From Bugula neritina (Eukaryota; Animalia; Bryozoa), in the NCBI GenBank assembly GCA_964035545.1, contig OZ037766.1:13382722-13446721 (forward strand): 64,000 nucleotides of DNA. The letters are read 5' to 3'. The translations under genes were made by a program, and so were the position numbers. Below the pieces are notes generated by a model, which worked only from the letters and a program-made list of their open reading frames with translations, did not search any database and was not told where the DNA came from. Numbering within the stretch: position 1 is the stretch's first letter; each line of letters begins with the position of its first letter. Below, piece by piece: positions 52,355-64,000 of this stretch.

Positions 52355-55300
52355 TTTAGTTTTTGTTGATTTACAGATTAATTCGTTTAGCTGCCCATTT
52401 CTATACTCAGTTTAAACTAAAAGAAAAGAACTTTGAAAAACACTTCATGTATTATTCCAGCCGCTATGAATAAGCTGTGATAAATACACGCAGGTATTAA
52501 TTCCTTAAATATGGAGTATTATGGACATACAACAGATACAAACAACTACACACAAACATCAATGCTAGAAATTTAAAGCCACGGCACACTTGCTTGTATT
52601 CAAGGAACTAAACATAAATAAATAATAATAACAATGTAGCCACCAAGATAGAAAATGGAGTTGCTTTGCCAAAATTTGTTTTGATTTACATAATTAACTA
52701 TATATTTATTTTTCTTGAATGTGAAGCTATCACACAACTATTGTCTATGGTCCTTTGCTTACCTGTCTGGACAAATTGAAATAATTTGAAGAACTGACTG
52801 CCAAAGATTGCTACTGAATGTTCTGGAAGGCCATTGCACTAACGGTGTAAGTGTTATAAGAAGCCCTATCAAAGATCACGCATTTGTGCATGATCAAATT
52901 AGGGTTCAGGGCCAAAAAATCAATAAAGTATAACAGGTTCATAAGAATATTATGTTGAAACATGTAACAAACCAGGCTTAACATTCTTGAACACTTGGAG
53001 GTGAAAAATTTGCGGGGAAATTGTTCTATAGCAGCATATATACAGTTCTATAGCATCAAGTACTTGATTGAAACTGAAAATTGTGAAAACAGTAAATTTT
53101 TAAAAAATCTGGTTACTTAAGTAAAAATTGTGTTTAAATACACTGAAATCAAAATTTAAGTATTGAAATTAAAAGAAAATAAACATAAATGCTTTATTCA
53201 AGAAACTACAATGTTTATATGTCAAATACAGTTTTGTTAAAGCCATTGTGTATTACAAAAAAGGGGAAACCATTAAAATAGCTAAACGATGTAATAAATT
53301 AAGCAAATTGCACTCACCAGGACTCTGTCAGCAAAAATTGTTGTGAAAATTTAATTCTGCCAAATTGGTTAAGCAGCTGCACGTACCGAATTACAGTGAT
53401 TGTATTGAACTATCAAAAGAAGCGTATCAATATAAAAGATCCTAAAGGGATTGATTTGTAGTGTAGTAGAAATTCTTGAAGAATGTACAGTAAACATAAT
53501 AAGAAATCAATATTTGTACATAAAACATTTATATGTGGCATGATGAACAATTTGACTGGGCAACAGCTAATACTTTACTAAAGGAATTCAGTTTGCCAGA
53601 ACTATTTAAACTAAACTAATTTATCTAAACACTTGATAGAACTTGTTAACAAATGACAATATTTTATTTAGGCAACAACTCTGATGTAAAACCCAATTTT
53701 TTTCATTGGCTTTACACAGTACATGACACATGAGACTATAACACAATTCTGGATATGAAAAGATAAGCCTTAACAGCTCAGTTGTCAAAATGTGTAGATG
53801 GACTAAAATGTATTATAAGTACATTGCCTAAAACTTTACTTATTACGTCAAGTTTAATAATGGTTTCAAATTTAAAATATACAGTGTGGCTAGTTTTAGT
53901 TCAACCTATTATCCGCCTGTTTCAGAATTGTCAATAAAAACTGGTTAATAATTAATTAATGATTAATGCACATGGTTTGAATAGCTTTTAATGCAGCACT
54001 AAAAGAACACTATAATTGATTTTACCATTTAAACATCATACACAAAGTAGTATATTTTTATCATGATAGTACTTTTCTAGCTATGAATTGTACCAACTAC
54101 TAATTATATTCAATTTTAAACTCAATAATCATTAGATTTGAATGAAACATGTATACACAAGCCATTAATCCAGATAATTGATAAAACATGAGAATATACT
54201 AGTAGGTAGATAATATAACATTAAGTTGCAAATAGGTTCTTGCTTTCAAACTTTCAGCAGGCCAATGCCCAAAAGTTGAGCCTTTAAATTAAATGCACGC
54301 CAAGATACCATACAGTCATAATTTGAACTTTTCCAATCTTGATTTTTATTCACAATTTATTAAAATCTCATCTTCAAAGTATTGAAGAAGTATCATCAGA
54401 TGGAAAGGAGCTAAGTGAAAAGCTTCATTAGAACAATATGAAGAAATCAGAAGCCAAATCAGATTACTTGCCATTAATAAAGCACTGCCCTAGGTACTCA
54501 TTGTAGAAGAATAGCATTGATCATGCAGCTGGATAAGTTTTACAGACCTGAGGGGTTTACAACTGCAGCAATAACTCTCAACTATAAATTTCCAACAATT
54601 ACATAAAAGTTGCAATTAATTTGCTAAAGTATTATAGTGTAAGTGAAAGATGAATATATTCTATTATTGATTTAGCAATTGGTAATTTCATCAGCAAATG
54701 GTTTCTATAACTTCAATCTTGCCTATAATTGGCTTATGGTGTCTATAAACATGATGGCCAACAAGAATGGTTCATTAACTATACATCAAATACTGACACA
54801 ATTCGGATGGCCTGGCACTTCTATACTATGAGCATTTACTTTGTGCTTTAATTTCTAAAATATCTAATGCAGTAAATTTAACCCTTTATTCTGTGTAATT
54901 ATGTGTAATTAATTTTATTGAAACTACAGAAAAAAGCATGTTTTTGGGAAGAGGCTGCAAAAATATCGAAGCACCAAATAGAATTGAAAAAAATTAAAAG
55001 TAAAGTATAAAATACTCAAAGGTGGGCCCACAAAACACTAGCTGACTAGCAATTAAGTAGTAAAGTGAATACAACACTCAATATTTTACACACACCCCTT
55101 AGATTAGGTTTCACACACAGCCAAGTACATTAACTTCTTATATAACAAAGCATACACTAATTAATAAATAACCTCTAGATGACTAGTCCATAGAAAAGAG
55201 TTGACTCAAGTAGCCTTCACAATATAAATTATTTACAAAAAAATTAAGGTGAAACATCACGGCCTGTTATTATTAATCAAGACTAGATCATAAAAGCTAT

Positions 55301-55369
55301 CAAAAAAGCTTACAGAATAATAAATTCTGAGTTCATAGTTGTAACATTGCAAGAAGATTGTTAGTCAGT

Positions 55370-58300
55370 TTACACATCTGTAACTACCTGACTTTTCTGT
55401 TTATTTTCAATATGTTCTTGCAGGTTCAGTATATAATCTTCAGTAGTCATACTTTCATTTATTTTGATTTTGTCAAAGTCTATATTACTGAATTGATTAA
55501 AATCAATATCGTTAATAGATTTATTGGTAAAGAAATCGTGTGCGCTGTGTCTACTGGAGCCAGGTCTGTAGTTATCGTATTCAGATTCCGCTCCTATATC
55601 GCTGAGATTGGGATCACTGCGGGAGAACTCGCTGCCTACCATAGATGACATAATACTCATGTCATCGTCAAACAGCTGAGAGTTGGACATGTGTGAATTT
55701 CTATTGTATCGAGCTCTCCTCTGATATGGTAAGTTTAGCACCTCCTCGCTTTCACTGGGCAGTAACTCCATACTCTTACAGTGTCTCAGCGTAGAGCCCA
55801 TTGTGCTGGCGGCACCCGCAGCCGTCGGCTTCAGTAGAGCCAGTAGTTTACTCTCTGCCCACTGTAGCCGCTGCAAAGGATGCTCATGCTCGTCCTGATC
55901 ACGTGACTTAGAGGACGTTGAGTATGGCTCTGTCTCATAGTCTGTATCACCTACGAGACTATCACAGTCTGCAATGTCACTTTCTATCTCGCTATACAGC
56001 TCTCCTACATTCTGCCCCGACACCTGCATACGCTGCAGTTTGCTCATGAACTTGTTGGAGGGAAGCGCCACGGCCGGGGCATTCTTTCGACTATACTTCT
56101 GTTTGGGTGCATTACCGGACTGAAAGTGATTTCTATTGTCGTAAGTGCCATAGTCAGTGCTGTACATGTTATCATACTCGGTTATGTTCGAGTCGTAAAT
56201 GTGACTTACATTTTCATTGTCGTCGTCTGACAACTCTGACTCAGTGGCGATGCTGACAGAAGGGTCGTGGAGAGATGTGCCAGATCCAGCTGACCCTGTC
56301 AGCATCTGTCCATTAGTCTCCGAAGATGCTGACTGATGGATATCTGCTGGAATATTGTCCCTGCTTAGCCCTGGTTCACTAATATCATGTGGTATGCTTT
56401 CATCTGCAGCTGCCATTGCTTCTTCTATCAAGTTTAATAATCAAATCAGAAACTACATTAAAAGTCAAACTTTGCTGTAAACTTTAAGAATTTCTTATTT
56501 AAAAAGAGTGCTTAGGTTATGCATAGACTTAGTATTATCACAGCAGCATGACATTACTGCACAGTAACTTCTGCCAGAGAAAACAGAACCAGACTGATAT
56601 TTTCAAATGACTAAACTAACACTACGTTTCCATGATTTGCATTTAGCGAATGGATTTTTCATTTGCCTCATGGAAATAGTTTCATCGAAGCAAAACCGCA
56701 ACTATAAGTCAATGCAAACCGCAAGCACAAATTACTCCGTAAGGGCATCCATTCACATAATGCGCATGTCATGGAAACGCAGTGATTAGCAGTTACCAAT
56801 ACTATACATATTATACATAAATACCAGCAAGTCGCTCAAAGCCAAATATAACTTTACATTTATTACCTTGCAGACAATTTGTGTTTTCTGAGTACTGGCT
56901 AGTGATTGGCTGATTTCTACTCTTGGAGGGTGTGGTTGGTGGAGAGAGACTACGTATGGTGCTGGCAGCAGTCCTACTACCAGTGCTGTTGGAGTGAGAC
57001 GGATTACGTTTACGGGGCAGATGTGGAGACTTATGTAGACTCTCTCTTGTCTTAGCAAACCTGCACATTGTAAAATAAAATATAGCAGAGTCTACTTGCA
57101 TGCAGATAAAACCACACTAGTGTAGGAAATATTATATGATAAGCCTGCACACATATAGTTATGGTGATTATGAAGAGACAAATTGGAAGCTTATAGGGAT
57201 AAAAAGTTCTCCAAGTAATGCATACCATATACATTCATAGTACATACATGCATACAGTACATGCTGACTTAAAATCAAACGCAAAGACTGATAATCAAAT
57301 CTACCTATTAAGCTGCCGTTTGAGTAAAGGAGACAAAGATGGGTCAGCATTAATGTTAGGGAGCTGCTGATTGGTCAACTGCTGGTCGGTCATTCTGGCC
57401 ATCATGAGAGGGGAGTCACCATCAGGAGTGGTGCTGGTAGAGCTTACATTTCCTTCCATCGAAGTCTACAATTAGAAAACAAACACACACACTTGGTGTT
57501 TAGTGCGTGTATGACATTACACAATGGTGACACCATAAAGGTAGCACAGTTCAATAACCATTTCTATTCTACACCAACTTAAACTCACACTTTTTGCAAT
57601 AAACTACATTTAATTCATAATTATATGTTTTAAAGAGTTTCAAAGAGCTATAAATTCTAAGGTACGTGGAATAGCTTCATCACAGTCACTATGTATAGAA
57701 TTATCATGTATGTATATGCATGTGTATGTAATGTGTATGTATACGTATAGTATATGCACGTGTATTAGCATGTAAGTGTATGTAAATATGTGTCTAGTAT
57801 ATGTATAATGCTCAGATATATTCAACATATGATGAAATGAACTTAATTCTAACCCTGGTATGTTGCATTTTTATAAACTTTATTCAATGCATACTGAAGA
57901 GCTATAGAATTATCTGTAAACTCGAACCATAAGATGGCTAGCTAATACATATTCACAGCAGCCAAGTTAACATTCCGGTACAAAAATACTCTGTATAGAA
58001 GTGAAAAGGGGCAACACACCTGCATCTTATCAGAATAGACGCTACTGGCCATCACTCGGTCTAAACCCAGAATGAGTCCTTTTTTCGGCGGGTCCAAAGG
58101 TTTAACAGGTTGCAGAGGGGGTGGCTGGTGCACCACTGGCTGGTGTTGGTGGGGGGAGGAGTATATTCCCCGTAGCAATGGCACAGTATCCTTACAATCT
58201 TCGCTATCTTCCTGGTCAACTCGCTCACTGTGTAATCATATTGCAAGCAATTGCATATGAAGTTCATAAAACCGTTTTTTAAGAAAGAACTGTTAAAACG

Positions 58301-61300
58301 AAACTCTATACACACGCCTCAAGCAACATATGCTAAAATAAAGTCCAAACATATACTATTTTATATGAACATGAATTAGTAACACTCTGTGAGTAGAAAG
58401 AGAAGGCACGTTATCCATAGCCCTAGTACCTGCTGTACTGGTTGTGTATGAGCACGGGACTATCTCTATACGACGACTGAGAAGAGCTCCTGCTAGGTAG
58501 CCTTAGAGGAGGAGTAGAGCGAGTGTAGCTGAGGGCAGGAGACATCTTAGCCTGTGGGGGTGGAGATCTGGGAGCGGAGAATGAAATTCCACTGGCTGAT
58601 GTCATCGCTGTATCACACAAAATCAAGGACGGTTAGAGTTTTACAGCATATCACTGCCTGCAGCATGATGTGAATGGGTGGAGTATTAAGAACTATGGTA
58701 TAATGATACATTGAAGTGCAATTCTGTAAACTAACATATTTCTAGAAATCAACTGAAGATGTAATATAAAAATTCTGACACAGGCCCTTTGAACACATAA
58801 ATTACAGGCGCATTTTAAATAAAGCATAAAACAGATTATAATATATTTATATTTGGGTAAATTAATTATTACAATAAATCAAACTATAATTGCTGTATAA
58901 TTTCTCTACGTCTAAGCAATCTGCACATCTATGACAATGCATAGACATCATCAAACTATGCAGTACATATGTTTGTATTCAGTGCAAAGCAAACCCCTTC
59001 CTGCCCCACACAGTACCTCTTTGTGCACTGTGATAAGATGGTGATTTATATGAAGAGTCTTGGATGTGGGAGGAAGAGTTTGTGCTCCGTCTGCTATGGT
59101 TTCTAAATAAAGGAAGTTCACCAGCTGACCGGGGATGTTTCTTCTGCCAGCTGTGACTGTAGCAACATACAAGATCATTACATTCATTTCACCTGACATG
59201 ACTACAATTCATTATTTCTCTGAACATCAGACTGTACCAAATAAGGTTTTGCAAGGTTTTATTTTGCAAATCGATTATATTAAATGAGTATTACCTGTTC
59301 TCTGATTGGTTGGATGACATAGTAGGCTGTTGTACGTCTCCATAGAAGTCAACGTGCCCCTCAGGTGTGTGTGTCATCAGGTGAGCAGAAGACACTGGCG
59401 GGTTCCCTGAAGCACAAATAAACATTAAATAATGTAAGTCATGGTGTTATAAATATTCTATATATATCCCTACAAGCACCATCACCACGCATACTTGTAC
59501 TTAATTGCATCTATAAAATCATAGAAACCCACAAAAGCTTACAACCATTTGATTGAAACTTATCATGGACAAGATTACTTTCCACAGCTTTTACTGAAGC
59601 ACTACATTATATAAAAATGATATATAAATTATAAATAATTATTGCAATTTATAATTGTACAAACATACAAATAGGGCATACCATAAACCCATCAACATTT
59701 ATTTGATGGAAATCTATTTGCTAGAGGATGCAAGAAGGTATTCACAAGGCAAAGACATACCAGTTAGATTAGCCTGAGTAAGAATGATGGTTCCTCTACT
59801 GTCTGAAGAATGCAACCTCTGGATAGGGGGAGTTCTGTTCTTGGCGTAATGCACTGCGGGGAGCTCACACGGGGACATTGATCTGGAGGACACTTTAATG
59901 AGCGACGAGCTTTCTGGAATCTATGTGAACAATTAAACCCAACATTATATATTAAGTCTAATATTTTAACTAAAATATTATATATAGAGTAATATTCTAA
60001 CATACATAGAGTAATATTCTAACATATACAGAGAAATATTTTAACTAAAATTTATAAGCTGCGTGTCCACTGCTTCGAATGAATCCGTATGGGTGTTCAG
60101 TCGGATGAATTTGTGGCTACGGTTTGCATGAACTTATGGTTGTGGCTTCATTCAATGCAACTGTTCACACACATCGAATGAAAGATCCATACGCATAATG
60201 CGAAGCAATGGTAACGCATTGATAGAGAAATATTGTAACCAACATATATGACAATTAATATTTTAATAAAAGCAATATTACAATACCTTATTCCTAATAG
60301 TGTAGCAACTACTGAAACAACATTAACCTTGCAAATAGTTTTACTGAACATTTTCAAAGCATGATGGTTTTGGTGAACATAATTTTTCAGTAATCTCTAA
60401 TATTCTTCTAAATAACACTTAATTTACAGGTTGATAACCTAGTATTACAAAAATTATTACAATTATCTGTTTATTCAGTTTTCCTTTCTGTAACTGAATA
60501 CCGAAGCATAAACTCAGGCAATGATTGATCAGTATATATAGAAGGCTAGCTATATACTATGCTGACCCAGCAGCATATTGAAACTTGTACAAACCTTGAA
60601 AACATTATCTACAGTAAATCCACTCTCCTTACTAAAGTTCCGAGTAAAACTGCTGCTTGGTGTACTGCCTGTGGAGTTGCTGTGCTGCAGCAATCCTAAA
60701 ACAATGAAAATGCTATGCATGCTAAGAATACTGTGTGGCTGCTACCAAACATGGTTGCTATCAAATTACAAAAAAAGATTTACTAAGTAAAGTTAACACT
60801 AATACGTAATGCACTGGATGGTGTACATATAGAAGGTTAACTATGCTACCCTATAAACATATTAAAACTTGTACATTTATTGGGTACCCTAAAAAAGACT
60901 GAAGTTGACGTTTAAGAAAGAAAAATCTATGCAACTCAAATAAACCTAAAATTCAGCTCAAATTCTAAAATTTGTTGACCATGCCCAGAAAACTGATAGA
61001 TTACACAAACTATGAAGAGTTACAGGAAGCGGTGGTGTGTAGTACCTGGGGGCCATTCTGTCTTCATCTCATAGCTGGGTATCCTAACTCTAGCCTGAGA
61101 CGGCGCAGACTGGAATGGGTATTGTTGGCTGCTGATCACCACTGTCTCAGCTTGACTCAAAGTCCCCACAGAATGGTTGTGGACTCGAGGTGACCTGATA
61201 ACAACCTTCTTAATACAGCAATTGACTTGTGTGGGATTGTATAAAACAATATTAAACAATACTATCTTAAAAAAATTATTGGAAGTAAAAACACGATTTT

Positions 61301-63959
61301 ATTACATCATCCAAAAATCTTAGCCAATCAAAAGGAAAAAGACTATAAACACATACAAACTTGCATTTGACAGGATAATATCTAGCAGAAGCAAACTGAC
61401 ACGTGCAGAGTTGCCTCACCTTGAACGCTGATAGACTTCAGTCTGACTACCGTCACTCTCATTATCACTGGCTATAACAGACTGCAGACGTCTGCTCACC
61501 ACAATGTACGGCTGCAGCTCTTGTAACACGGGCATGTTGCCGTGAGACCGCGGCTGGAACTGGAATCGTCTCCTCAGTATTTGCGCCACTTCTTTATTCA
61601 CCTGCGAGAAAAGCACAACCAGTTATGGGACAAGCATAATCTATCTTGTTGTATTTCAACGAGTAACCCAGCACTATAATTAAACTCAAACCACTCTATC
61701 AGTCTGTGCATTCAGCAGCTAAAAATAAGAACTAAACTGGTGACCTTTAGGTCAGCTACACCATATGACATAAGCAATGAATACAGAGGGACATTTTGTT
61801 GACAGCAAAGATCACCTGAATATGATTTACTTTTCCAGAAAGTTCCAGCATTCTAGCCATCTCGACTGCTGGTCCCCAAATGTTGTACTGAGGCATCTTA
61901 TATCCCAACACTCCTTCAACCACGGGGCCTATTGATACTCCTAAATGCACCAATCAGCAGTGAACAACAAATACTTCAGGTACGATACAAAAATTTAAAA
62001 TACAAAGGAAGTAAAGATTTACGAATAAAATTGGCGATTCTAACAGAATAAAACATTCGCAATAGTTTATTATCTCAAACTACTTGTATAATACAAAATA
62101 TGATTTCCAATATCACAAAAAAAAACAAACTAAAAGACCACTTCTCATAGCTATAATTATCCACAAGTCACTTAGCCAACCGTCAACCAGAAGCGTATTA
62201 GAAACTAACCAGCTCTGAGCACGAGATTTCTACCAGCCATTGCGTTGAGCTGCATGAGACAGTGCTTCATATCGAGTAGGAGGTCGACTAACTTGCACAA
62301 GTGTTTCATTGCGTAGTCTTGCTCACCCCCATGCTACATACAACAAGTTATAACACTTATACTCATTACAAAGTAAGGCTCAACTACCAAAGGCTAAAGT
62401 TAAAACTTCAACATATATTTTTTCTCAAAATAATTAAAAAAATGCTGAAAATGAAAATTGCTGAGGAAAAATGTATGAAAATAACAAAATTTCAGCTGTT
62501 GAAACACGATTCGCAGAAGTGATATCACAGAATAAATCTAATGAATATAACTGGAGAAGTTACCAGGGAAGAGACACAATAGGATGTGCTGCATACAGCT
62601 GGGTACAGGTGAATGGCAATACGACAACGTACCTGGCCATAGGGGGCTGATGAGCCACTAATACCCGATACTAGAACATATGTCAGCCCATCATTGTACA
62701 CCTTCTCAATAAGCTGGAAATCAGGTCTCCTCAACAACTAAAAATATATTATTAAACTCATTGAAAAACAGAAGAGAAAATGAGTTGAGTTGAATGTACC
62801 AAGCACTTAAATGCTTTGATCACTGATGCTGAAATATGGATAAGCAAAGTAGAGCAATATAGCACTAATACCACTACTTATGTTGAAAAGGTATATAAAA
62901 CATGTGCATGATGCTCTATCAGCATATACACATTATTCATAATATATATATTCTATAATACTAAGAATTCACATGTAAAAAAAGTTGAGTTAATGTTATA
63001 TTGCAATTGCCCGATGGCAAACATAATATTTACACATTTCCTGAGAGTTTGTGTGATTGGTCAAAACTCACGTGATCGAATGCTGAGGTCACATCATGCA
63101 GAACCTGCATCAACAGCAACGATTGATTTGATTGGTGCATTTCGGCAGCAAAACCGGCAAAATTAGGAATCGTTAGAAAAGCTACTCCCGCGAGATTATG
63201 GCTCCTACAGAAAGGTTTCTACCAAAACACCAATACAATGAGAGTTTTACACTCAAGGCATTGTCAAGGCAAAGACTCATATACTTCTACATATTAGAAG
63301 TAAATAAAACCAGAATAATCAACTATAAGTTAATAAACTTGTACATGTTGAATGTATCATTTTGAAAGATATTTATATTCGAAAGAAGCATTATGTGAAA
63401 TATAAATTTACATAAAACTTTCTTTTTTATTACTAGCGATATGTGTTATATATTACAGTGTATATTACTAATGTACCCAACAACTATATGAGTGTACATG
63501 CATAATATAATTATATTGTTACAGGTACCATACTAAAAACCATCATAATTAACTTGTACACTAAAATACGTATATACCCCCTATATAATATATGTGTTTA
63601 GCATATATAATACATTATTAGCATCACATATGTATATCTCTTGCATACTAAATTATTCCCTACTATAATGTGCGCAATGTGGATACACACAACATATGAC
63701 ATATATTAATAGTATACTCACCACAACACACTCTGCATTGCTATAGTGTCCAATGACATGTGAAGGTAGGGCGTTCTCCACCACCCCCAATCTAAGAGTT
63801 GTCATATCCTGAGCATTCTGATAGCAACTAGTCTTCTTGTGCTGCCATATGAAGTCTAGCTTTCTGACCCATTCACTGTGCCGGCCAATGAGAATGTGCA
63901 TTATAGCGAAGTGGACCAGTGCGACTATGGCCATAACAGTGGAGGGAGGCAGCCCTTCT
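55370..63959 (-). CDS. 3' part of a transmembrane adenylyl cyclase-like gene (last TM helix, degenerate C2 domain, long tail); 5' part lies beyond the window
   Basis: Exons 63959-63722, 63218-63072, 62737-62633, 62333-62210, 61940-61816, 61601-61420, then nine small phase-compatible exons (~61194, 60695, 59919, 59406, 59157, 58607, 58227, 57465, 57060), ending with 56424-55370. AC-type motifs EWVRKLDFIWQ, NALPSHV, GVAFLTIPNF, AFDHLL..F..IEK, GPVVEGVLG..PQYNIWG, G..NHIQV. Confidence 0.88.
56621..56783. mobile_element. MITE family A copy (opposite orientation) in the last cyclase intron
   Basis: TIRs actacgtttccatga ... tcatggaaacgcagt; interior is complementary to the 49965/60058 copies. Confidence 0.65.
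60058..60220. mobile_element. MITE family A copy in a cyclase intron
   Basis: gctgcgtgtccactgcttcg ... cgaagcaatggtaacgca; shares ggtttgcatgaact(t/g)atggttgtgg and catcgaatgaaa with the 49965 copy. Confidence 0.75.
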
Positions 63960-64000
63960 CTAACAACACATCAATCGTTAATAACAGTTATACAGTTTAA

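What the first reader, a model, noticed from the sequence alone, without database searches (positions are those of the whole stretch)
61420..63218. Adenylyl cyclase C2 domain with the canonical catalytic residues replaced: candidate pseudo-cyclase
Seen: the frame is intact and the fold motifs are kept, but against the mAC C2 consensus (rat AC2 numbering, aligned from memory) EKIKTIGSTY becomes EKVYNDGLTY (adenine-selecting K938 to Y), QYDIWG becomes QYNIWG (D1018 to N), GNTVNVASRM becomes GPAVEMARML (transition-state N1025 to E, R1029 to M), and the KGKG loop (K1065) is absent (GNMPVLQE). Established: these C2 residues are needed for ATP cyclisation. Inference: with no frameshifts or stops over many exons, this is a retained non-catalytic or repurposed cyclase (G-protein sink, dominant-negative partner, scaffold), or its active site is supplied in a non-standard way by the unseen C1 domain.
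Basis: partly seen in the sequence, partly recalled or inferred. Interest (0 to 1): 0.8.

Follow-up and report, generated by a model that had tools for sequence, protein, structure and literature searches.

The report
Conserved dead adenylyl cyclase in bryozoans
A moss-animal (bryozoan) gene for a 12-helix membrane adenylyl cyclase of the AC1/rutabaga type has lost seven of its eight catalytic residues, yet it is spliced, expressed and kept under strong purifying selection in several bryozoan lineages, so it is very probably a natural 'dead enzyme' that works without making cAMP.

Summary
Exon-by-exon alignments to solved AC2, AC5, AC8 and AC9 structures and to mollusc and insect AC1-like proteins place Y at K938, N at D1018, E at N1025, M at R1029 and no lysine at the KGKG loop. 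I fetched the upstream exons. C1 is degenerate too (D396 to N, R484 to Q, only D440 kept) and carries no swapped K/D/N/R set, so 7 of 8 canonical residues are gone.

It is not a pseudogene:
- All C2 splice sites are AG/GT and the frames are open.
- Spliced contigs from four studies join the exons.
- dN/dS against a sibling lineage is 0.02 over 305 codons.
- At least five more distant lineages (56-78% identity) keep the same substitutions. The Watersipora subatra orthologue keeps D396 to N.

One point beyond the reading: the TGA at 61416-61418 lies in a splice donor, so the gene continues into a long Ser/Pro-rich tail.

The first transmembrane block and the tail end match AC1/rutabaga-type cyclases best. 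Three other cyclases in this genome keep the canonical motifs.

Best reading: a conserved non-catalytic AC1-type membrane cyclase acting as a regulator or scaffold. The scan had already flagged this same gene from the neighbouring window (s1-472698).

The parts
63722..63959 (-). Exon: end of transmembrane helix 12 and the linker into C2 (contains ...NALPSHV...)
   Evidence: Joint 63218/63722 in spliced contigs. AG/GT sites and frame. tblastn to AC1-like proteins, E 1e-8 to 5e-10. The upstream loose end matches the previous exon in L002 (...HDIQY).
63072..63218 (-). C2 exon 1 (AFLTIPNF in place of FASIPNF). T sits at the position that mirrors the metal Asp of C1.
   Evidence: Joints; frame. BLAST to AC1-like proteins, E about 5e-8. 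Orthologues are 61-76% identical.
62633..62737 (-). C2 exon 2 with K938 replaced by Y (IEKVYNDG in place of IEKIKTIG).
   Evidence: gapless alignments. Y is kept in L009 and L008.
62210..62333 (-). C2 exon 3 (helix and strand before the catalytic loop). It ends with one base of a split Gly codon.
   Evidence: Joints; frame and junction codon GGA. Orthologues are 75-78% identical.
61816..61940 (-). C2 exon 4 with D1018 to N, N1022 to P, N1025 to E, S1028 to R and R1029 to M.
   Evidence: PDB, E 8.5e-11; PF00211, 35.5 bits. In one search, six lineages share N1018, an acidic residue at 1025 and R1028. Position 1029 is K in five lineages and M here.
61420..61601 (-). C2 exon 5: KGKG (K1065) loop replaced by PVLQ, followed by the strongly conserved RRLQSVIASDN. 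It ends in a splice donor, not a stop.
   Evidence: alignment. (joint 61192/61418, cut +2). (GT donor). (junction codon AGG).
61046..61194 (-). Tail exon 1 (Ser/Pro-rich C-terminal extension).
   Evidence: Spliced contigs in four runs. Open frame. Found downstream of C2 in orthologue contigs L005-L008.
60595..60695 (-). Tail exon 2.
   Evidence: Joints 59920/60595 and 60694/61045. Frame.
59761..59920 (-). Tail exon 3.
   Evidence: Orthologues in L006 and L008 are 62-67% identical.
58020..59405 (-). Four further tail exons: about 59296-59405, 59017-59157, 58430-58606 and 58020-58227.
   Evidence: Pieces and joints of spliced contigs. I did not refine these boundaries.
57304..57465 (-). Next tail exon. 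The upper edge is fixed at 57465; the lower edge is that of the open frame only.
   Evidence: The loose end of the contigs at 58020 matches 57436-57465 with one mismatch. Open frame.
55373..56440 (-). Open frame holding the last exon. Its final ~140 residues match the C-terminal end of protostome AC1-like cyclases.
   Evidence: E 2e-9; E 1e-11; hits only to AC1-like proteins. Its link to the upstream exons is inferred: 1674 further bases of a spliced contig lie beyond 58020.

Best explanation
The finding is the C2 half of a single-copy, roughly 18.6-kb, multi-exon gene on the minus strand. The gene encodes a 12-helix membrane adenylyl cyclase of the AC1/rutabaga type: TM1, C1, TM2, C2 and a long Ser/Pro-rich tail with a conserved end.

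Shown: seven of the eight residues that carry out ATP cyclisation are replaced (D396N, R484Q, K938Y, D1018N, N1025E, R1029M, no Lys at K1065; D440 is kept here and is Glu in two other lineages). No swapped set exists in either domain. The gene is spliced, transcribed and under strong purifying selection. The substitutions are shared by several bryozoan lineages.

Inferred: the protein cannot make cAMP by the two-metal mechanism and is a pseudoenzyme. It most likely keeps the C1-C2 pseudo-dimer and the membrane bundles as an interaction platform. One route would be to pair with the catalytically competent cyclases of the same cell, as the inactive AC3-AT and truncated AC8 isoforms do. Another would be to bind their regulators (Gs alpha, G beta-gamma, Ca2+/calmodulin) and so tune cAMP output indirectly.

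My odds: about 0.85 that it is catalytically dead, about 0.65-0.7 that it is of AC1/rutabaga descent, and about 0.5 for the regulator/scaffold mode.
For: Catalytic residues:
- C2 substitutions. C1 substitutions.
- The list of eight canonical residues is from PMC6005667, Table 1.

Real, expressed gene:
- Spliced contigs from four runs in four studies, one on record as RNA-Seq. A single 3713-nt contig spans C2 and the tail. All C2 joints are GT..AG.
- AG/GT sites and open frames.
- Single copy, no retrocopy.

Selection:
- Against sibling contig L017, 305 codons give dS 0.20, dN 0.004, omega 0.02. Against L004, 142 codons show no amino-acid change at dS 0.26.
- C1 and C1b: 122 codons with 19 synonymous and 0 non-synonymous differences.

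Conservation of the new residues:
- Five further lineages at 56-78% identity keep Y938, N1018, D/E1025 and R1028, and lack KGKG.
- Watersipora subatra and contig L025 keep N at D396 and L at R484.

AC1/rutabaga type:
- Summed exon scores rank mollusc, annelid and insect AC1-like/rutabaga proteins first.
- The TM1 exon gives E 1e-27 to 1e-9 against AC1-like proteins and 1e-8 or worse against AC3-, AC6- and AC8-like.
- The tail end matches only AC1-like proteins.

Other cyclases: three paralogues in the same genome keep FAD(I/L) and (Y/F)D(I/V)WGxTVNxxSRM.

Precedents for inactive membrane cyclases that regulate active ones: PMC11971047 and the title and abstract of PMC5540275.
Against: - There is no enzyme assay, so inactivity is inferred from residues.
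- D440 is kept in this lineage. Most orthologues have R and K at 1028/1029, which could partly replace R1029.
- The replaced positions are themselves conserved. That fits a retained pocket with some ligand or chemistry as well as it fits a dead site.
- The run types are guesses except for X11. The contigs come from a sibling lineage that is 3-7% different, not from this individual.
- The exon borders of C1 and TM1 are not confirmed by RNA.
- The TM1 tree is unresolved, with long branches, so AC1 descent rests on score ranks and the tail match.
- No binding partner was tested.
Confidence: 0.72

Rival explanations
1. The remodelled cleft is a new ligand, metal or redox sensing site. The protein would then be a receptor-like sensor that uses the cyclase fold for binding, not catalysis.
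For: - The new residues are as conserved as the fold: Y938, N1018, acidic 1025, R1028 and a new Glu in VVEGV in six lineages.
- Four cysteines (C-x5-C-x3-C-x10-C, with a small insertion) were gained at the start of C1. They are kept in all three lineages seen and are absent from canonical AC1-like proteins.
- One Cys is kept in WQYKxC.
Against: No ligand is known and there is no structural model, because the joined protein could not be folded under the rules. Conserved residues can also simply stabilise an empty cleft. The cysteines may be structural or lipidated.
Confidence: 0.15
2. It is still a nucleotidyl cyclase or a related transferase with unorthodox chemistry or a different substrate.
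For: D440 (or E) is kept and Asn at 396 can still touch a metal. R1028/K1029 are basic in most orthologues. Purifying selection on the cleft is strong.
Against: Seven of eight residues needed for metal binding, base recognition, ribose orientation and phosphate binding are replaced together. No swapped set exists in either domain. Every active class III cyclase listed in PMC6005667 Table 1 keeps both Asp, the Asn and the Arg.
Confidence: 0.08
3. It is a decaying pseudogene or an unconstrained recent duplicate.
For: Catalytic residues are lost in both domains. Most exons score below the Pfam threshold on their own.
Against: - No stops or frameshifts, and canonical splice sites.
- Spliced transcripts.
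- Omega 0.02 with dS 0.2.
- Orthologues with the same exon structure in several lineages, including Watersipora.
- Single copy.
Confidence: 0.02
4. The substitutions are an alignment artefact and the canonical residues sit nearby.
For: R sits one place before R1029. The K938 exon matches PDB chains only weakly (E 0.5).
Against: phmmer, BLAST and MAFFT give the same gapless alignments against many cyclases. The flanking invariant residues (PQY, WG, the A of the VASRM stretch, IQV) are in register.
Confidence: 0.01

Closest known systems
AC1 / rutabaga group of Ca2+/calmodulin-responsive membrane adenylyl cyclases (for example Haliotis, Octopus, Owenia and Tubulanus 'adenylate cyclase type 1-like', and insect rutabaga)
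   Same: TM1-C1-TM2-C2 layout. The best exon-wise similarity is to this group. The TM1 block is 28-32% identical with E down to 1e-27. It has a long C-terminal extension whose last ~140 residues are shared only with protostome AC1-like proteins.
   Different: Those proteins keep all canonical catalytic residues. This gene has lost seven of eight and has gained a four-Cys cluster at the start of C1. Its catalytic domains are so diverged that most exons fall below the Pfam cut-off. A tree of TM1 does not resolve its place.
AC3-AT and N-terminally truncated AC8 isoforms of mammals (PMC11971047)
   Same: Membrane cyclase variants without enzymatic activity that bind active cyclases and lower cAMP output. 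This is the mode I propose here.
   Different: Those are truncated splice or promoter isoforms of active genes, and they are retained in the ER. This is a full-length, separately encoded gene that lost activity by point substitutions and has been kept that way across species.
Engineered catalytically inactive AC6 (AC6mut, PMC5540275)
   Same: A full-length membrane cyclase with a disabled active site that still has cellular effects independent of cAMP synthesis (title and abstract).
   Different: It is a laboratory mutant with a single change, not a natural, conserved protein.
Degenerate pseudosymmetric site of C1-C2 cyclases and of soluble guanylyl cyclase
   Same: The class III fold in which one of the two symmetric sites has lost its catalytic residues and serves for binding (forskolin or nucleotides). 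The residue roles are tabulated in PMC6005667.
   Different: In those enzymes one site stays active. Here both sites are degenerate.

Membership tests
Class III nucleotidyl cyclase catalytic domain (Pfam PF00211) | Significant match to the domain profile | tested here: met
   C2 exon 4 alone scores 35.5 bits against a cut-off of 21.9. Two C1 exons score 17.8 and 16.4 bits, below the cut-off on their own. PDB AC5 C2 matches at E 8.5e-11. The Watersipora orthologue P0236 carries PF00211 and matches AC5 at E 6e-32.
12-helix membrane adenylyl cyclase architecture | TM1, C1, TM2 and C2 in order in one gene | tested here: met
   Exon-wise tblastn of full-length cyclases gives collinear hits from TM1 to C2. 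AC_N scores 26.9 bits on the first exon, just below the 30.9 cut-off. Adcy_cons_dom gives only a faint match. I did not count the helices.
Catalytically competent class III cyclase | Two metal-binding Asp in C1 (D396, D440) | tested here: not met
   D396 is N here, in Watersipora and in L025. D440 is kept here but is E in Watersipora and L025.
Catalytically competent class III cyclase | Base-recognising pair K938 / D1018 | tested here: not met
   Y and N. Y is kept in 3 of 3 lineages and N in 6 of 6.
Catalytically competent class III cyclase | Transition-state and phosphate residues N1025, R1029, R484 and K1065 | tested here: not met
   E, M, Q and no Lys (PVLQ in place of KGKG). Orthologues have D, K and L, and likewise no Lys in that loop.
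AC1 / rutabaga subgroup | Subtype-specific TM1 block and C-terminal extension | tested here: met
   TM1 gives the best E-values to AC1-like/rutabaga proteins (1e-27 to 1e-9). The tail end hits only AC1-like proteins.
AC1 / rutabaga subgroup | Placement inside the clade on a tree | tested here: inconclusive
   The TM1 tree is unresolved with long branches. I built no tree of the joined catalytic domains.
AC1 / rutabaga subgroup | Stimulation by Ca2+/calmodulin | not testable with these tools
   Needs a binding or activity assay.
Pseudogene | Stops or frameshifts, neutral evolution, no transcript | tested here: not met
   Open frames and AG/GT sites. Omega 0.02. Spliced contigs.

The most novel reading that the evidence does not exclude
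The cyclase fold has been turned into a sensor. The conserved new cleft residues (Y938, N1018, acidic 1025, R1028, Glu in VVEGV) and the gained, conserved four-Cys cluster at the start of C1 would bind a metal, a redox signal or a small ligand. The AC1/rutabaga coincidence detector of other animals would then have become, in bryozoans, a non-enzymatic receptor that passes its signal on through partner proteins.
Probability: 0.15. Interest if true: 0.85.

Novelty: new variant of a known kind. Interest (0 to 1): 0.66.

Why it matters
All membrane adenylyl cyclases studied so far are enzymes. Non-catalytic roles have been inferred only from engineered mutants (AC6mut) or truncated isoforms (AC3-AT, short AC8). 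My four literature searches found no described natural, full-length pseudo-cyclase of this class.

This gene has kept the whole 12-helix architecture under strong selection in several bryozoan lineages after losing the chemistry. That makes it a natural experiment on what the membrane bundles, the C1-C2 dimer and the long tail do apart from making cAMP. It also suggests that the AC1/rutabaga-type cyclase, central to learning in flies and molluscs, has lost its catalytic role in this phylum.

Tried and rejected
Searches that gave nothing:
- All searches were exon by exon by reference, or used natural database proteins. No 3-D model of C1-C2 was therefore made.
- The search for related loci with a C1 exon in metagenome contigs found nothing, because exact 8-mers are too strict at about 60% identity. 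The first attempt was too short.
- A PDB search with the D396 exon found nothing. MAFFT and the Watersipora protein settled that position.
- Pfam on single exons is mostly below threshold.
- No tRNA or Rfam family lies in 55000-64000.

Inconclusive:
- The TM1 tree is unresolved.
- The paralogue at G000:C1:28.5 Mb was checked as a possible true AC1. Its best matches are AC8-like and it has no AC1-type TM1 or tail match.

Readings rejected:
- Pseudogene, retrocopy and misalignment.

Other points:
- The taxon of most orthologue contigs could not be named.
- The window's own species is not verified.

Full report
WHAT IS THERE. The quoted peptides lie on the minus strand. Spliced contigs from four public runs in four studies, one on record as RNA-Seq, were laid on 58001-64000. 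They define the exons 63722-63959, 63072-63218, 62633-62737, 62210-62333, 61816-61940 and 61420-61601. All of their introns are GT..AG on the minus strand. The frames are open and fit each other across split codons. The contigs differ from the window by 3-7%, so they come from a sibling lineage.

THE GENE DOES NOT END AT 61420. The TGA at 61416-61418 is part of the donor AG|GTGAGG. The transcripts splice on to 61046-61194, 60595-60695, 59761-59920, four more exons down to 58020, and an exon ending at 57465. The open frame 55373-56440 then matches the last ~140 residues of mollusc, annelid and nemertean 'adenylate cyclase type 1-like' proteins. The protein therefore has a long Ser/Pro-rich tail, as rutabaga-type cyclases do.

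- phmmer against PDB chains aligns exon 61816-61940 without gaps to the C2 of AC5 (E 8.5e-11), AC8 and rat AC2. This gives D1018 to N, N1022 to P, N1025 to E, S1028 to R and R1029 to M.
- The K938 exon aligns IEKVYNDG to IEKIKTIG.
- MAFFT puts PVLQ opposite KGKG.
- The roles of the eight canonical residues are tabulated in PMC6005667.

THE UNSEEN C1. I located the window in its genome and fetched 20 kb upstream (L002 position plus 63279 gives the window scale). The C1 exons are:
- L002:7204-7401, the end of TM6.
- L002:6839-7003.
- L002:6290-6448, with SIACVNMTG opposite SILFADIVG, so D396 is N.
- L002:5572-5727, with LGD kept, so D440 is kept.
- L002:4116-4334, with Q opposite R484.

C1 has L, K, L and D where a swapped K/D/N/R set would sit. 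C2 has T and L where metal aspartates would sit. Neither of the two symmetric sites is complete, and seven of eight residues are replaced. The first coding exon (L003:53-769) starts with ATG and carries the first transmembrane block.

NOT A PSEUDOGENE.
- Against the sibling genomic contig L017, 305 codons of TM12 and C2 give dS 0.20, dN 0.004 and omega 0.02. Against L004, 142 codons show no amino-acid change at dS 0.26. The tail has omega about 0.07.
- C1 and C1b segments show 19 synonymous and 0 non-synonymous differences in 122 codons.
- The gene is single copy with no retrocopy.

CONSERVED ELSEWHERE.
- A full HMMER scan with the 42-residue exon found short open-frame fragments from other assemblies. 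These share PQYNIWGPA(V/M)D(M/T/D)ARKLE.
- Their contigs L005-L011 carry the same exon structure at 56-78% identity. Y938, N1018, acidic 1025 and R1028 are kept, there is no KGKG, and the motif RRLQSVIASDN after C2 is nearly invariant.
- Position 1029 is K in these lineages and M in the window lineage.
- A word search with the TM1 exon found eleven further clusters at 52-65% identity. One is an annotated partial protein of the cheilostome Watersipora subatra, a different superfamily from Bugula.
- In Watersipora (L024) and in contig L025, D396 is again N, R484 is L and D440 is E.
- The loss therefore predates the split of these lineages.

WHAT KIND OF CYCLASE.
- Summed exon scores rank Haliotis, Octopus, Lottia, Owenia and Ylistrum AC1-like proteins and mayfly rutabaga first. 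All of them have canonical residues.
- The TM1 block matches AC1-like/rutabaga proteins at E 1e-27 to 1e-9, and AC3-, AC6- and AC8-like proteins at 1e-8 or worse.
- The tail end matches only AC1-like proteins.
- A TM1 tree is unresolved, so I give AC1 descent about 0.65-0.7.
- A scan of the genome with Haliotis AC1-like found the TM1 and tail matches only at this locus.
- Three other two-domain cyclases keep FAD(I/L) and (Y/F)D(I/V)WGxTVNxxSRM. The one at G000:C1:28.5 Mb looks AC8-like.

MECHANISM. It is shown that the protein lacks the residues for two-metal cyclisation in both sites, and that it is expressed and constrained. It is inferred that the protein is catalytically dead and acts through interactions. 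Precedents are AC3-AT and truncated AC8, which are inactive, bind active cyclases and lower cAMP (PMC11971047). AC6mut has cAMP-independent effects (PMC5540275).

Because the new cleft residues and a gained four-Cys cluster at the start of C1 are themselves conserved, a repurposed binding site remains open. Four literature searches found no described natural pseudo-cyclase of this class.

LIMITS.
- No assay was done.
- The C1 and TM1 exon borders lack RNA support.
- Run types are guesses except for X11.
- The species of the window and of most orthologue contigs is not verified.
- The same gene was flagged earlier from the neighbouring window (s1-472698).

Noticed in passing
L002:6839-6967 (minus); L024:20005-20130; L025:12734-12856: The start of C1 has gained four cysteines (C-x5-C-x3-C-x10-C) and a 4-5 residue insertion. 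All three bryozoan lineages seen keep them, and canonical AC1-like proteins lack them. This could be a metal or redox site.
   Followed up: partly
window 60103-60216: A ~100-base stretch inside a tail intron has very high summed depth in run X11. Contigs run off it into many different flanks, so it looks like an expressed multi-copy element. No tRNA or Rfam match.
   Followed up: partly
L024:10001-37011 (Watersipora subatra, GCA_963576615.1 OY755161.1): The public annotation splits the orthologue into two gene models: a 363-aa partial 'adenylate cyclase type 6-like' and an adjacent 1554-aa model. By TM1 and tail similarity the name 'type 6-like' looks wrong.
   Followed up: partly
P0032 (Owenia fusiformis AC1-like), about residues 962-1001: This otherwise canonical annelid AC1-like protein has K at R1029 and QYDIYG in place of QYDIWG, a partial departure at the same site.
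   Followed up: no
window 61422-61470 (minus) and orthologues: The motif RRLQSVIASDN directly after C2 is nearly invariant in four lineages and holds an RRxS site of the protein kinase A type. Mollusc AC1-like proteins have GRRSGG at the same place.
   Followed up: no
window 59320; joints 58606/59017 and 59157/59296: The sibling transcripts have an in-frame 3-base deletion in a tail exon. Two joints do not read as plain GT..AG, and one has an extra letter. Their borders were not refined.
   Followed up: no
L010 / L011 (JGI 3300033081, 3300033060): The most distant fragment with the same substitutions (56-59% identity) sits in much more G+C-rich DNA. It may come from a distant bryozoan or another phylum.
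   Followed up: no
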